From Antechinus flavipes (lineage: Eukaryota), in the NCBI RefSeq assembly GCF_016432865.1, contig NC_067400.1, positions 629,176,001-629,240,000 on the forward strand: DNA of 64,000 nucleotides. Reading direction: 5' to 3'. The first letter of the stretch is position 1; each line of letters starts with the position of its first letter. Of the stretch, positions 6,624-53,564 are shown piece after piece. The notes beneath the pieces were generated by a model that was not told where the DNA came from, did no database searches, and worked only from the letters and a program-made list of their open reading frames with translations. Both the position numbers and the translations under genes were made by a program.

Positions 6624-6789
6624 GTGAGTAACCGGTGTTGCTGATTTCGGACCCCGGGGGCTGGGGCCAAGTGGGCAAGGGGCTCCGCTTCGAGTCCCGG
6701 GCCCCACCTCGCCTTCCCTCTCTACAGAGCGGGGTCCGGAGCGGTCCGGGGCGGCACGGCTCCCAGCCTCCTGTGACCCCTCCCCAGCG

Positions 6790-8984
6790 ATGGCCGCAGC
6801 CCGCCCGGCCCTGGGCCGCGTGCTGCCCGGCTCCTCCATCCTCTTCCTGTGCGACATGCAGGAGAAATTCCGAGGCGTCATCTCCTTCTTCCCTCAGATC
6901 GTGGCCGTGTCCGCCCGCATGCTCCAGGTGCGGGCCCCGCCCCAGCTCTCTACCTGCCTGGCCAGGTTCTGGTACCACCTGAGCCCCCCCCCCCCCCGCA
7001 GGTATCTGGTACCACCTGAGCTCCCCAGGTGTCTAGTAAAATCTGACCCCTCAAGTGTCTGGTACCACCTGGCCTCCCAGGTGTCACCCTGACACCCCTA
7101 TTCCCACTCCCACCCCCCTGTCTAGTGAAATCTGACCCCTCGTGTGTCTGGTACCACCTGACCCCCCACCCCCGCAGGTATCTGGTACCACCTGAGCTCC
7201 CCAGGTGTCTAGTACAACCTGACCCCTCAAGTGTCTGGTACCACCTGAGCCCCCCAGGTATCTAGTACGTGACCCCTCAGGTGTCTGGTACCACTGGAGC
7301 CTCCCAGGTGTCTGGTACTGCCTGACCCCACACCCCACCCCCACTCCCATCCCCACCCCCACCGTCTAGTAAAATCTGACCCCCTCAGATGTCTGGTACT
7401 ACCTGATACCCCCAGGTGTCTGGTACTACCCGAGTCCCTCCAAATAATTGGTACCTGAGCCCCCCAGGTGTCTAGTACAACTGAACCCCTCAGGTGTCTG
7501 GTACTACTTGGGCCCCTCCAAATAACTGGTACCTGAGCCCCCCAGGTGCCTGGTACCACCTGGCCCCCCTCTAACTGTTTTATCCTCACCTACCCCCCCA
7601 CTGTCATTCCCACCTGACTCCCCCTCCAGGTGTCTCGTCCCCACTTGACCCCCCACTTGTCCCCTGACCGCAGGTGGCCCGCGTGCTGGACATCCCCGTG
7701 ATGCTGACAGAACAGTACCCCGAGGGCCTTGGTCCCACAGTGCCAGAGCTGGGGGCCCAGGGCATCCGAGCCGTGCCCAAGACGACCTTCAGCATGGTGG
7801 TGCCCGAGGTGGAGCGGCTGATGAAGGCCAAGCCGGGCCTGAAGTCGGTGCTGCTGTGCGGCATCGAGGCCCAAGCCTGTATCATGGTAGGCCCCCCCAC
7901 CCCCCCCCCATGTCAGGTAGACCCTTGGGGTCGGCCCTGACCTCTGACCACTCCGCAGAGCACAGCCCTGGACCTGCTGGAGAGAGGCCTGGACGTGCAC
8001 GTGGTGGCCGACGCCTGCTCCTCCCGAAGGTCAGTGAGCCGGTGCGGAGGGGCCCAGATCTGGGGGGCACTTGTGCAAAGAAGTAAATGAGGGAGTGGAC
8101 TGTACCACCTGGCCCCCGGGTGGAGGGGAGGCCCCAGCGCGGCCGGAGCCCACTCCCCTTTGGACTGAACCAGCAGGCAGCCAGAAGAGGGAGGAGAGGT
8201 CCGGCTTCATCCCCCAACAGAAGTAAGCTCTGGTCCCGGGGTTACTGCTGTCAGTGTCACAGGCCTGCGCAGGATCCGCACCTTGTCCCTTCCTTGGCTC
8301 CCTCACAGAAGTCTGGACCTTCTAGCAGCACTCCCCTCCCCCAACCCGGGGCTCCTGGCCGTCAGCCCTCTCCTCCCCAAACCCATGTCGTTTGCCTCCC
8401 CCGGCCTAGCACTGTGCCCGGTACACAGCTGGAGCCTAATGGGTGTTGCTGTAATTCTGAGAGATCGGTCATCCAGCCACACTCCCGCCCCCATTTCCGA
8501 GAGCGAGGCCGGAGCCCAGGTCACCCAGCCCAGAGCCACCCCATCTCCCACCGTGGGGGAGGTGAGAGAGATCTCCAGGCGCTGTCACCCCACCCCCACC
8601 TCACTTCCTCTTCCAGTCAGGTGGATCGGTTGCTGGCTTTGTCCAGATGCGCCAGAGCGGGGTCTTCCTCACCACCAGCGAGTGCCTCATACTGCAGCTG
8701 GTGGGCGATTCTGCCCATCCCCGCTTCAAGGAGGTAACTCTCCCCCAGGCACTGGGCTCCCCTCCCCTCCCTCCTTGGGCCTGCAGCTCCCTCCCCCAAT
8801 CCTGCGCTCGGCCCCGGGGGTTTATTCCTCCACTCTTCCTCTTCCTCTCTCTAGCCCACTCCTCCTGTCTCCACTTCTCCCCACTTCTTCCTCTTCCCTC
8901 CAGGTGCAGAGATTCATTAGGGAGCCAGCCCCCGATAGCGGCCTCCTCGGCTTGTTCCAGGGCCAGAGCCCCCTCCTCAGCTGA
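6790..8984 (+). CDS. ISOC2: Isochorismatase domain-containing 2; coding exons 6790-6927, 7674-7886, 7959-8029, 8617-8733, 8904-8984; 1-nt deletion near 8646 in exon 5
   Basis: [69 protein letters not shown] and [15 protein letters not shown] match ISOC2. Exon 5 is 117 nt where 118 is needed to keep frame. AATAAA at 9250. Confidence 0.95.
6960..7635 (+). repeat. ISOC2 intron 2 minisatellite (about 26-30 nt units, gtgtctggtaccacctgagccccccag)
   Basis: Seen directly; many GGTACC and CAGGT motifs. Confidence 0.95.
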
Positions 8985-11796
8985 ACACCTTCAGACCCTC
9001 CCCCCCCCCAAACACACACACCGAGTCAGCCTGGGCTCCCCTCTCCTGGGGGCGAAGGGCTCAGTCCCGGGAGAGGGGAAAGCTTCCCACTTGAGACGGA
9101 CCCTCCCTCCCCACCCTCAGCGGAAAGCACCTGTCCCATTGGCCGACCACCTCCCTCTATGCAAATGTTCCTGGAGGAGAAGGAGAGGATTGGCTGAGCT
9201 CTAGAGGGGGCGGACTGGGGGGAGGTGACCCTCGAAGCCGAGTTCGGGGAATAAAAGCTTTCTTCCACATATGGACGAAACCATTCTTGATTACGGGAGG
9301 GGGCGCGGGGGAGGAAGGGGCCATTGGGAACTGGTGGGGGGGTCCTCAGAGATTTAGAGATGCTCAGAGACGAGAGACGCGTGGCGGCTATACCGAGATA
9401 CTTGGCGACAGGGAGGGGCAGGCAGGGGGCCGTCGGGGGCAGGACTGGGCGCGGAGGATAAGCCCGTCTGTCCCGAGATCCGGAAGCCCGACATCCGTAA
9501 AGCCAGGTGAGCTACAGAGAAAGGGGGAGGGGGGGCGAGTCCACAGCACGTCAGCTCCGGAGTCCAGGCGCCCATCGGCCCCCTTTGCCGCCGTCAGCGC
9601 CCCCCTCCCCAGAGACCCAGGCATCCGCGTTCCTAACGCCCCCAAGAGAGATCCAGACACCCGAACTCGATCTCCCCCCCCCCCGACAGACCCAGGCATC
9701 CGAGCTCCTAACCCCCGCCCCCTCAGAGACCCGGGCATCCCTTCTCCGCAATCTTGGTAGCCTTCAGGGGCTCGGAAGTCCCGGGGCGCAGCCTCCTGCC
9801 TCGGGCGGCCGCGTCAGGAATTCAGCCCCTTTGGGGGAACGTTGCTTTTCCCCCTCCAAGTTCTTCCTTTCTCGGGCCCCCGGGCCCCCTCATCCCCTCT
9901 CGCAGGTGGCGTGATCCCTGGTCTCCCTTCAAAGCCCCCCAGGCATCCTTGGTACCCAAGCCATATTCTCCTCCCGGGACTCGGGCAACCTGCTCTCTCC
10001 TTCCTACCCCGCTCCCCCGAGAGTCCTGACCTCAGCCCCCGCCGCAAGGACCCCGGAACCCTGGACCCCATACCTATGCAGAAGCCTGCCTCCCTCCCCA
10101 GGCCCGCGCTCCCATCTCCATGGCAACAGGAGTCTATTCTGCGCCTGGAACAACCCGCTTCTGCCGCAGCCGTGGCCCTCCCCCCCACTTTCCCCTTCCC
10201 GTCCCCCACCCCAGCTCCCGGAAGGGAAGGGGCTCTTTGAGTCTGTCTGCCATTGTCGCCCCCCTCCTCACGCCGAGCCCCCCCAGGCAGGGAGAAATGG
10301 AGGGGAGATGACAGGCCGGGGCTGAGGTGCCTAGAACAAAGAAAGACGATGGAGCCTGAGACGAAAGGACCCTAGCATAGGAAGGCACGCAGCCTGGGGG
10401 GGGTACTGGGGGGGGGCAATAAACGGGCGCTGCCCTGCTTCCTCCCGGCTCAGCCTGCAGCGGCCAGAACCCCGCCCCCACTCTGCTGCTCCAGGACCCT
10501 TCCGTCTGGCTGTCCAGAAGCCCACTCGTGTCCCCCCATGCCATGGCCAGCGGCTCCCGTCCTTTGCCCCTGCCGTTCCGAAGGCTTCCTTCTTCCCAAC
10601 CCTAAATCCTCCCCCGGAGCCCCTAGAATCTGCACAGAGCCACACACCCCCCAAGTGCCCCAGCTCCCACCTAGCCACCCACACACAGGCACACAGACGG
10701 GGCTCTGCCCCCCCCCCCACACACACACACAAAGATACACAGGGAGCGAGCTCGCACCGACACCGCTCACAACGCTCGGCCGCTTCCCTCCCTCACACGC
10801 TCCCCAGGCTGAAGCTGTGGGCAATTGGCAAAGCCGGGTAAGGAGGGGGGGCCGGAGCCCCCGCCCAGCCCCTGTCCGTCTCTGTGGCCCTGCTCCCAGC
10901 TGGGGGATGGGCAAGGGGGGCGTTGAATCTCTGCTTTGGCATAAGCAGGTGGAGGAGCGCAGACGGGGGCCAGCGGAGGAGACGGGGGCTAGGGGGCCAT
11001 TGGAGCTCTCCACCCAACACTCCCGGGAAGCCCGGGCCGGTGGCAGGGGGCCAAGAGCTCGCGGGTGAGAGCGGCCTGGCCCTGCCCCTCCCTCCCCTGC
11101 CTCGCCTCCCCCTCCATCCCCGGCTTCGTTTCCCTCGCTGTTTCTAAGTGTCTCCCACATCTCAGTCTGCGTCGTCTCCTTTGTCTGCCCCTCTCGGCTC
11201 TCCTGCTTCTCACTCTGGGGCCGGGAGGTGGCCGCCTCTCCCGGCTGAGGCTAGTGGGGGCCCGGGGGACAGATGTGGCCGCCACTCTCTGTAGCCGCCC
11301 CCACCAAAGACCACCGGAGGCTAAGGGGGAGCAGAAGGAAGGGGGTCCGTCTGCCGGCCGGGGACTTTGGGGGAGGGGGATTCTGTGTGTGTCCGGGGCC
11401 CCGTTTGGGGGAGGGGGCACCCCACCCCCGCTGTGACTTGGGCGGCCGGAGCTGTGCCCAGGTGTTTCTGGGGATTGTGATTGCGGTGGCTGGGGGTGGG
11501 GGATGGGTTCCTGCCTGTGGGAACCAAGTGTGCACCTGTGTATGCGGATGCGTCTGTCACTGCGTGTGCGCGCGTGAGTGTGAGCGCGCGTGTGCGTGTG
11601 CCGCGGGACCGGAGAGCTCCCGTCCGGGAGGGGAAGTGCGGCGGCCACAAGTAGTGTCTGGCCTGCAGCCGGGCCCCCGGGGCGCGGAGGAGGCGCGCGG
11701 CCGTCGGGCCGGACCGCGCTGCCGGGGGCAGAGCGTGGCCGGGGCCGCCGGCGGTGTCTGTCAGCGTCTGGGGGGGGCTGGCTGCCTGGGTGGGTG

Positions 11797-51006: not shown

Positions 51007-53564
51007 ATGGACAGTAAGTTCCCTCGAGTTCATAGGGAGCGGGGCAGAGGGAGGGAGGAGGGAGGGACCCCGGGCCGAGGGGGAGCACACGGGGAGGGGG
51101 AGAGAGGCAGGCGGAGGGAGATGAATGAATGAGACAGGAGAAGGTGGGACCCGCAAGCTGCCAGGTAGGGCAAGGTGAAGGCAGTGGAGGGCCCAGAGCC
51201 GAAGGGGAGCCGCAGCCAGCCGGAGGGAGCACCGGGGAGCCCAGACACGGGGCGAGAGGGCCGGGGACAGGGAGCCACAGCCAGCCGGAGGGAGCACCGG
51301 GGAGAGAGGGAGCACCCGGGAGAGAGGGAGCACCCGGGAGCCCAGACCCGGGGCGAGAAGGCCAGGGAAAGAGGGAGCCAGGCAGTGAAGCGGAGGTGAC
51401 GAGCCCCCGAGAGAGCAGAGGCCCAGGAGAGCTGGGGACAAATGGTCAGGCAGCAGCAGAACGCAGACCCAAAGAGGCCCGGCCAGAAGGACCCAGAGAT
51501 AGAGCAAAGACACTCTGGGTGACAGGGAAAGGGGAGGAGATGGGAGGGGAAGGAGGCTGGGCTGTGGGGGAGCCTCTGATTGGCTACGTTGGGCATGAGG
51601 GGGTGGGGGTTCCCCCAGGGCTGAGCCTAGGGCTAGGGAGTGGGGTGGGGGGGAGAGTCTCGGCTTTGGTTTTCTTGCAGTCTCTCTCAGCTCTGTCCCT
51701 CTCACTCCTTAGATGTCCTTTCCCGATCCTATCTCGGGAGCTGTGCCCCTCTCACTTCCCAGGTCTCTCCCCAGTCCTGCCTCAGTGGCTCTGTCCCTTA
51801 CCTCTCCATTAGGCTGCCTTGTACCTGTTCACTTTTGCCCTAGCTCCGGGGCCTGGGTCTGTGTGGCCTTTGCACCTGCTTCTTGTTCTGGCCCAGGCTG
51901 GCCTTTCTNNNNNNNNNNNNNNNNNNNNNNNNNNNNNNNNNNNNNNNNNNNNNNNNNNNNNNNNNNNNNNNNNNNNNNNNNNNNNNNNNNNNNNNNNNNN
52001 NNNNNNNNNNNNNNNNNNNNNNNNNNNNNNNNNNNNNNNNNNNNNNNNNNNNNNNNNNNNNNNNNNNNNNNNNNNNNNNNNNNNNNNNNNNNNNNNNNNN
52101 NNNNNNNNNNNNNNNNNNNNNNNNNNNNNNNNNNNNNNNNNNNNNNNNNNNNNNNNNNNNNNNNNNNNNNNNNNNNNNNNNNNNNNNNNNNNNNNNGTCT
52201 CTCCCTATTCTCCCTACGTCCCCATGTCTCTGAGTTTCTGCTCCCGCTTCTCTTTGCCCCAGTGTCTGAATCCCCACGTTTCTGAGCTTCTCCTACGGAG
52301 TGTGGAGGCAGCTGAGCCCGCGCCTGGGGCTGTTGAGGGGGGCGGCGCCGGGCCGCTGCCCCCGCAGTCTGTGTCTAGAGCCCGGGCTGGGGGTGGGTGG
52401 GACTCGGGCAGAGACAGACACATACACAGAGACAGGGAGACAGGAATAATCTGAAACAGAGACACGGAGAGATCTTGCCCCCGACTGGATCTCCCCGCTG
52501 GTCCTGGACTCGGGGGGGGGGGGGCAGGGGTGTGGGTGTCTGCGGACTGGGGGGTGCGGGCGGCAGGTCGTGGCCTGCACCTCCCCCCTGCCCCCCACCC
52601 CTTAGGGCCGGGATTCCGGCGTCCGGGGGCGGAGGGAGACGCCCGGCCCGTCTGCTTGCCCCGGGCCGCGTCTGCTCTGCTGGGCGGGGCCCCTGCCTTC
52701 GAGGGAGGAGGGGAGGGAGCCTGATCCCCAGCCCGCCCCCTCAGGGCCCCAGCCTCCGCGGCCCCTCCGCCCGGCTGCGAGGTCCCAGGAGTCCCGGCCC
52801 CTCTCTCCCGAGCTCTGCCTTAGCCCGTCGCTCCCCGTGGCTGTTTCCTTCCCCCAGGTTTGTGCCGCGTAGTCCTGGCCGTGCTTAGCCTGTGGCCCAA
52901 CCGAGCTGGGGCCTCAGCACCCCCCGTGCCCCCCGGGTCTCCCCGCGGCGCCCCCGTCCCGGGCCCAGGGGAGTCCCGAGCTGAGCTGGACAGCGCCGTG
53001 CTCCTCACCCGGGGGCTCCTGAGAGAAACCCGGCAGCTAGCCGCTCAGCTGGTGAGACCCCGCCCCCTTCTCTTCTCTCCTCCCTCCTCCCCCCTCCCCA
53101 TCTGTGCTCGCCTAGGAAAGAAAGCAGCGGGCCCCCGGCACCCAGAGAGCTGGGGCGGGAGACAGAGACACCCAGAGACCAAGAGGTGGGTCAGCGAACG
53201 CAGAAAGGAGAAAGCCGAAGCAAGCTAGGAGGGGGGAGGGGGAGAGATCGGGAGGGAGGGAGGGACAGAGGGAGGGAGAGAAAAACTGAGAACGAGATTG
53301 ACAGACAGAGAAATTGAGAGATAGAGAAGAAAACAGAAACAGAGGAGAGGGGAGAGAGAAACAGGAGAGGGAGGGGGAGAGAGAAACAGGAGAAAAAAGG
53401 GGAGAGAAACAGGAGAAAAGGGAGAGAGAAACAGGAGAGAGAGAGAGGGGAGAGAGAAGAGAGAGAGGAGAGAACAGAAGAGAGAGAACAGAAGAGAGAA
53501 ACAGGAGAGAAACAGAGGAAAGAGAGGGGAGAGAGAAACAGGAGAGGGAGGGGGAGAGAGAAAC

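What the first reader, a model, noticed from the sequence alone, without database searches (positions are those of the whole stretch)
8029..9204. ISOC2 exon 5 has a 1-nt deletion, with a built-in frame-restoring donor and an NMD-escaping alternative product
Seen: QVDRLLALS is followed by tcc-ag-atg, so the Arg codon lacks one base and exon 5 is 117 nt, not 118. Canonical splicing shifts the frame into a new tail that stops at TAG 9202-9204 in the last exon (279 aa, before AATAAA 9250). The alternative donor CA|GTGAGC at 8034 adds 4 nt and restores the frame (207 aa), with [11 protein letters not shown] replacing the [10 protein letters not shown] region. The other seven fully resolved genes in the window show no frameshift. 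Inference: either a sequencing error at AA, a recent loss-of-function allele, or a splice-compensated frameshift.
Basis: partly seen in the sequence, partly recalled or inferred. Interest (0 to 1): 0.72.

Follow-up and report, generated by a model that had tools for sequence, protein, structure and literature searches.

The report
Base missing from ISOC2 in assembly
The one-base gap that breaks the ISOC2 reading frame is in this assembled sequence, but other DNA and RNA from the same species and two relatives all carry the extra base and splice normally, so it is most likely an assembly error or a rare allele of the reference animal, not a splice-rescued frameshift.

Summary
ISOC2 coding exon 8617-8733 is 117 nt, and the conserved frame breaks between G8646 and A8647 (tcc-ag|atg). 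Canonical splicing gives 279 codons ending at TAG 9202-9204. The +4 donor (8033^8617) gives 207.

Four public runs were laid on 7640-9300, and all four have one more base at this spot. A genome-sized run and a spliced RNA run of the best-matching organism (two samples) read TCCAGAATG. Two related organisms read TCCAGGATG. The spliced contigs join 8029^8617, not 8033^8617. The two window frames tile residues 142-151 and 152-180 of the 206-aa dasyurid ISOC2 proteins without a mismatch, so nothing downstream has decayed.

An earlier scan note names the genome as yellow-footed antechinus. That assembly was built from PacBio long reads with wtdbg2 and polished once with Pilon, and the missing base contracts AA to A.

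- Consensus error: about 0.8.
- Real allele carried by the reference animal: about 0.17. Its own reads could not be identified, so this is not excluded.
- Splice compensation: about 0.02.

Other notes of this scan report one-base frameshifts elsewhere in this genome. Interest is low.

The parts
6790..6927 (+). ISOC2 coding exon 1 (ATG 6790-6792), 46 codons
   Evidence: 46/46 residues identical to Sminthopsis ISOC2 (P0001). The loose ends of the RNA contigs at 7671 read the end of this exon (table 7).
7674..7886 (+). ISOC2 coding exon 2, 71 codons, core of the isochorismatase domain
   Evidence: PF00857, E 1.9e-05, profile positions 37-127; 68/71 identical to P0001 and 69/71 to P0123. The joint 7886^7959 is seen in RNA contigs X3 and X15.
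7959..8029 (+). ISOC2 coding exon 3 (71 nt), ending ...tcc tcc cga ag|
   Evidence: PF00857, E 1.6e-05, profile positions 129-151; 23/23 identical.
8030..8035 (+). Canonical donor AAG|GTCAGT, the one actually used
   Evidence: table 5: the spliced contigs X3 (depth 200) and X15 skip 587 nt, which is 8029^8617.
8034..8039 (+).
   Evidence: Present in the sequence. No joint 8033^8617 appears in any laid contig. No difference is listed at 8030-8044 in organism B, whose exon is intact; 29 of that contig's 33 differences are listed.
8617..8733 (+). ISOC2 coding exon 4: 117 nt in the window, 118 nt in all four laid runs
   Evidence: In one search, tables 4 and 8, the X3 and X15 contigs over 8615-8731 show 0 other letters and 1 gap.
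8645..8647 (+). Site of the missing base: ag|a, with the third base of Arg151 absent
   Evidence: table 4: 'A put in behind 8646' in X1 (15.2/15.2) and X3 (200.5/200.5); 'G put in behind 8645' in X5 (61.6/61.6) and X15 (32/32); the two frames tile ortholog residues 142-151 and 152-180.
8904..8984 (+). ISOC2 last coding exon, with the true stop TGA at 8982-8984
   Evidence: 26/26 identical to P0001 and P0123. The joint 8733^8904 is seen in X3 and X15.
9202..9204 (+). TAG reached only by the frameshifted reading of the window text
   Evidence: first stop after 279 codons; ORF 8647..9204.
9250..9255 (+). AATAAA polyadenylation signal

Best explanation
ISOC2 here is an ordinary, intact, expressed five-coding-exon gene for a 206-aa isochorismatase-domain protein. 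The assembled sequence has lost one A from the dinucleotide AA in codon Arg151 (AGA ATG written as AGATG). This is most likely a residual single-base deletion in the long-read consensus that polishing did not repair. In the species the exon is 118 nt, the canonical donor at 8029 is used, and the frame runs to TGA 8982-8984. The '+4 donor' is simply the second GT of the intron start GTCAGTGAGC. The 279-aa and 207-aa products are consequences of the missing letter, not products of the animal.

Shown: the extra base in all other data, canonical splicing, and perfect tiling of the orthologous protein.

Inferred: that the fault lies in the assembly rather than in the reference animal's own DNA.
For: table 4: all four runs have one more base at 8645/8646. 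X1 is a single contig covering the exons and introns of 7640-9300 at even depth, from a run whose contigs total about 3.1 Gb, so it is taken as DNA. X3 is a spliced contig of depth 200 from another sample. Both read +A. X5 and X15, two related organisms, read +G.

table 5: the spliced contigs join 8029^8617 (a 587-nt skip), not 8033^8617.

the window's two frames tile residues 142-151 and 152-180 of the 206-aa Sminthopsis and Sarcophilus proteins with 39/39 identities. The last exon is 26/26 identical. All eight members of the marsupial cluster read ...LALSRMRQSG.... Exon 4 shows 0 other letters against X3 and X15 (table 8), so there is no decay after the break.

the other two indels between the window and X1 (7899, 8338) lie in poly-C runs, and this one contracts AA to A, a homopolymer-type pattern.

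From general knowledge, that route leaves residual 1-bp indels.

Unchecked leads: other notes of this scan report one-base frameshifts in conserved genes of the same genome, and one follow-up found 'one base missing from this assembly'.
Against: The run ids are coded, so none of the laid runs could be shown to come from the assembled individual.

X1 and X3 both differ from the window at 7768, 8523 and 9114. The window therefore carries a haplotype distinct from theirs, and a real deletion on that haplotype is possible.

Contigs drop rare variants, so a heterozygous deletion allele in X1 or X3 would go unseen.

Pilon polishing with 50x reads of the same animal should usually repair a plain consensus deletion, and a heterozygous real deletion would survive polishing.

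Confidence: 0.8

Rival explanations
1. This is a real, rare one-base deletion allele carried by the assembled individual, probably heterozygous, and captured by the long-read haplotype. It would encode a 279-aa protein with a foreign C-terminal tail. Its stop lies in the last exon, so the transcript would escape nonsense-mediated decay. It would be a private loss-of-function variant and not a feature of the species.
For: The window haplotype differs from both other individuals of the same organism at three shared substitution sites (7768, 8523, 9114), so it is a distinct haplotype. The gap survived Pilon polishing with reads of the same animal, as a heterozygous variant would. Downstream codons are undecayed, which fits a very young allele as well as it fits an error.
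Against: It is absent from every other data set laid: two samples of the same organism and two relatives. The prior for a frameshift in one particular, highly conserved gene is low; the C-terminal half is 100% identical among dasyurids. The AA to A contraction and the assembly route fit a consensus error. Other one-base frameshifts are reported across this genome (unchecked notes).
Confidence: 0.17
2. This is a splice-compensated frameshift. The deletion is real, and the gene is kept functional by moving the donor 4 nt downstream (8033^8617). The result is a 207-aa protein with [11 protein letters not shown] in place of [11 protein letters not shown].
For: The arithmetic is right: +4 and -1 restore the frame, and the first stop comes after 207 codons. 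GTGAGC is a plausible donor core.
Against: No contig shows the 8033^8617 joint. The RNA contigs of the same organism (depth 200) and of a relative use 8029^8617. No difference is listed across the GTCAGTGAGC donor in organism B, whose exon is intact, so it is not a response to the deletion. The +4 site scores far lower (3.7 against 8.4 bits, approximate matrix). The replaced segment [11 protein letters not shown] is invariant in all marsupial proteins examined. The species' exon is 118 nt, so the +4 donor would break the frame.
Confidence: 0.02
3. The extra base is added at the RNA level by editing or slippage, while the genomic DNA truly lacks it.
For: The RNA contigs X3 and X15 carry the extra base.
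Against: X1 and X5 also carry it. Both are unspliced contigs that include the introns, from runs whose contigs add up to genome size (tables 1 and 8).
Confidence: 0.01

Closest known systems
Marsupial ISOC2 (isochorismatase domain-containing protein 2), 206 aa, e.g. Sminthopsis crassicaudata XP_074163366.1 (P0001) and Sarcophilus harrisii KAM9038587.1 (P0123)
   Same: Same exon-by-exon protein: 202 of 205 whole codons identical to P0001. PF00857 matches on exons 2 and 3. Same C-terminus ...FQGQSPLLS.
   Different: The window text lacks the third base of codon 151. All other data for the organism have it.
Residual single-base indels in long-read (PacBio CLR / wtdbg2) assemblies polished once with short reads
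   Same: A one-base deletion that contracts a homopolymer, in a G+C-rich stretch (64% GC). It is contradicted by short-read contigs of the same species. The assembly route is as described in PMC9290055.
   Different: The run is only two bases long (AA), shorter than the typical error-prone homopolymer. The reference animal's own reads were not identified.
Tandem 4-nt donors (GTNNGT motifs) that give minor out-of-frame isoforms
   Same: The intron begins GTCAGTGAGC, with a second GT 4 nt downstream.
   Different: No use of the second GT is seen. With the true 118-nt exon its use would shift the frame.

Membership tests
ISOC2 / isochorismatase domain (Pfam PF00857) | Match to the isochorismatase domain profile | tested here: inconclusive
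   exon 2 scores 25.3 bits and exon 3 scores 25.5 bits, against profile positions 37-127 and 129-151. Each exon alone falls just under the 27-bit gathering score. The exons were scanned singly because the joined model was not searched.
ISOC2 / isochorismatase domain (Pfam PF00857) | Orthology to named ISOC2 proteins over the full length | tested here: met
   the best hits are marsupial ISOC2 proteins of 206 aa. All six exon pieces place collinearly at residues 1-46, 47-117, 118-140, 142-151, 152-180 and 181-206, with 202/205 identities to P0001.
Assembly consensus error | Independent sequence data of the same species carry the base | tested here: met
   table 4: +A behind 8646 in X1 (DNA-like) and X3 (RNA), which are two samples of organism A.
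Assembly consensus error | The assembled individual's own reads carry the base | not testable with these tools
   The run ids and samples are coded. X1 may or may not be the reference animal.
Assembly consensus error | No decay of the reading frame beyond the break | tested here: met
   29/29 and 26/26 residues identical downstream; 0 other letters in exon 4 against X3 and X15.
Assembly consensus error | Error-prone context and technology | tested here: met
   AA contracted to A. PacBio, wtdbg2 and one Pilon round, provided the species named in note s1-180311 is right.
Splice-compensated frameshift | The frameshift is present in the DNA of the population | tested here: not met
   absent from both samples of organism A and from organisms B and E.
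Splice-compensated frameshift | The compensating junction 8033^8617 is present in RNA | tested here: not met
   table 5: only the 587-nt skip (8029^8617) appears. Contigs cannot exclude a rare isoform.
Splice-compensated frameshift | The compensating site arose with or after the frameshift | tested here: not met
   table 3: no difference is listed at 8030-8044 in X5 (29 of its contig's 33 differences are listed), and that organism has the intact 118-nt exon.

The most novel reading that the evidence does not exclude
The reference animal really carries a young one-base deletion allele of ISOC2, probably heterozygous. Its transcript escapes nonsense-mediated decay and encodes a 279-aa protein with a foreign tail. 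A trace of +4 donor use might yield an in-frame 207-aa form.
Probability: 0.15. Interest if true: 0.2.

Novelty: not a real feature. Interest (0 to 1): 0.05.

Why it matters
It matters mainly for quality control. Taken at face value, the gap would produce a false ISOC2 pseudogene call, or a false 207-aa or 279-aa protein model, in this marsupial. It adds one checked case to the scan's list of one-base frameshifts in this assembly. Frameshifts in conserved genes of this genome should therefore be checked against reads before any biological reading. If it proved to be a real private allele, it would be an ordinary rare loss-of-function variant.

Tried and rejected
- Pfam scans of exon 4 in either frame and of exons 1 and 5 gave nothing. 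The pieces are too short, so the frame question was settled by tiling on orthologs instead.
- I looked up the two window ORFs that span the gap (8087-8734 and 8283-8981), hoping to find read-derived contigs with the same gap. Neither is on record, which says nothing either way.
- The word search found no protein of this assembly among candidates of 85-270 aa, and none in the marsupial cluster. How the public annotation treats the gene remains unknown. A second costly search for a 279-aa model was judged not worth it.
- An acceptor 4 nt downstream (tcag|gtgg) was considered and rejected. It does not restore the frame (-4 and -1), and no such joint is seen.
- RNA-level insertion was rejected because the unspliced contigs carry the base.
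- The joined spliced protein was not sent to any search tool. Exons were searched singly by reference. Only the lengths and first stops of the joined models were computed in a script.
The N run at 51909-52196 was left alone.

Full report
**What is in the window.** The region is a G+C-rich mammalian gene cluster. ISOC2 lies on the + strand. Pattern searches fixed its coding exons at 6790-6927, 7674-7886, 7959-8029, 8617-8733 and 8904-8984, all with GT..AG borders.

Translating 8618-8647 gives [10 protein letters not shown]. Translating 8647-8733 gives [29 protein letters not shown]. The two frames share base A8647, so exactly one base, the third of an Arg codon, is missing between G8646 and A8647. 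The exon is 117 nt.

Canonical joining gives 279 codons, ending at TAG 9202-9204. Moving the donor to 8033 gives 207 codons.

**What the protein should be.** Exons 2 and 3 match the isochorismatase domain PF00857 (25.3 and 25.5 bits, each exon alone just under the 27-bit cut-off). For the word search I used the stop-free stretch 6628-7089, scored on exon 1 only. It found marsupial ISOC2 proteins of 206 aa as best hits. The cluster of the best hit holds eight marsupial proteins. Seven are 206 aa; the koala entry is 290 aa and is flagged low quality.

All eight read ...[22 protein letters not shown].... The window's pieces place collinearly on Sminthopsis (P0001) and Sarcophilus (P0123) at residues 1-46, 47-117, 118-140, 142-151, 152-180 and 181-206. 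Frame A ends at residue 151 and frame B begins at 152, with 39/39 and 26/26 identities around and after the break. Nothing downstream of the gap has decayed.

**The decisive test.** The look-up of sequencing runs listed 20 runs. Organism A holds 0.60-0.88 of the sampled words, organism B holds 0.38-0.43, and organisms C to E hold about 0.15-0.24. I laid X1 and X3 (organism A, two samples), X5 (organism B) and X15 (organism E, RNA) on 7640-9300.

- X1 gives one contig across the whole stretch, introns included, at even depth. Its run's contigs total about 3.1 Gb, so I take it as genomic DNA.
- X3 gives a spliced contig of depth 200.
- Table 4: X1 (15.2/15.2) and X3 (200.5/200.5) have an A put in behind 8646, reading TCCAGAATG.
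- Table 4: X5 (61.6/61.6) and X15 (32/32) have a G put in behind 8645, reading TCCAGGATG.
- Apart from that gap, the X3 and X15 contigs show no other difference over exon 4 (table 8).
- Table 5: X3 skips 587 nt with GT..AG ends, which is 8029^8617. X15 shows the same joint with a synonymous CGA to CGG change just before it.
- No contig shows 8033^8617.

**The '+4 donor'.** The intron begins GTCAGTGAGC. A simple donor weight matrix scores the canonical AAG|GTCAGT at 8.4 bits and TCA|GTGAGC at 3.7 bits. The matrix was typed from general knowledge and is approximate. No difference from the window is listed at 8030-8044 in organism B, whose exon is intact; 29 of that contig's 33 differences are listed. 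So the second GT was there before, and independently of, any deletion. With the true 118-nt exon, using it would destroy the frame. It is a coincidence of sequence, not a compensation.

**Error or allele?** Earlier notes of this scan call the genome a dasyurid, specifically the yellow-footed antechinus. I could not verify the name directly because organisms are coded. The pattern of runs does fit the genome paper: a 2021 study with genome-sized runs of two samples plus small RNA runs.

That paper (PMC9290055) describes about 100x PacBio reads, corrected with Canu, assembled with wtdbg2 1.2.8 and polished once with Pilon using 50x BGISEQ reads of the same male. A second male was sequenced for demography only. 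From general knowledge, such assemblies keep residual one-base indels.

The three indels between the window and X1 are two poly-C length changes (7899, 8338) and this AA to A contraction. Other notes of the scan report one-base frameshifts in conserved genes of the same genome (TTC31, PIAS3, CRYBG1, ACP7 and others). One follow-up concluded that a base was missing from the assembly elsewhere. These notes are unchecked leads, not support.

Against a plain error:
- X1 and X3 both differ from the window at 7768, 8523 and 9114, so the window carries its own haplotype.
- Contigs hide minor alleles.
- A heterozygous real deletion would survive Pilon, whereas a simple consensus gap often would not.

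I therefore put the consensus error at about 0.8, a real private allele of the reference animal at about 0.17, and splice compensation at about 0.02.

**What led nowhere.** Exact look-ups of the two window ORFs that span the gap found nothing. No protein of this assembly appeared in the word search or in the cluster. The joined spliced model was not searched. Exons were searched one by one by reference, and only lengths and first stops of joined models were computed in a script.

**Verdict.** ISOC2 is intact and expressed in this species. The frameshift is a property of the assembled text, or at most of one animal's allele. This is not a real feature of biological interest, but it is a useful caution for other frameshift findings in this genome.

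Noticed in passing
window 6994-7085 and 7170-7569: ISOC2 intron 1 holds a degenerate minisatellite of 26-27-nt units (about CCCCCCAGGTGTCTGGTACCACCTGAG), some 15 copies at 64-69% matches.
   Followed up: partly
window about 8412-8489 (intron 8030-8616): One frame of this intron stretch reads [26 protein letters not shown]. It is 42% identical to the extra insert of the predicted 258-aa Monodelphis ISOC2 isoform X1 (P0010). It is a conserved intronic piece that the opossum model exonises. From memory it resembles a MIR-type SINE core; this was not tested.
   Followed up: partly
window 7899 and 8338: Poly-C runs differ in length by one base between the window and the DNA-like contig of X1. At 8338 the RNA-run contig X3 agrees with the window. 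These are either length polymorphisms or further consensus or contig errors.
   Followed up: no
window 9027 (3' UTR): The RNA contig of organism E has 24 extra bases behind 9027, and several small indels between 8989 and 9108 relative to the window.
   Followed up: no
window 8647-9204: The MRQSG frame stays open through intron 8734-8903 to TAG 9202-9204 (185-aa ORF). This is why the frameshifted reading runs on so far.
   Followed up: yes
window 9179-9220: One X3 contig shows a back-joint, 9220 to 9179, with CGGACT between. X3 depth also falls away after about 9208, ahead of the AATAAA at 9250. Unexplained; it may be a contig artefact near the transcript end.
   Followed up: no
   Followed up: no
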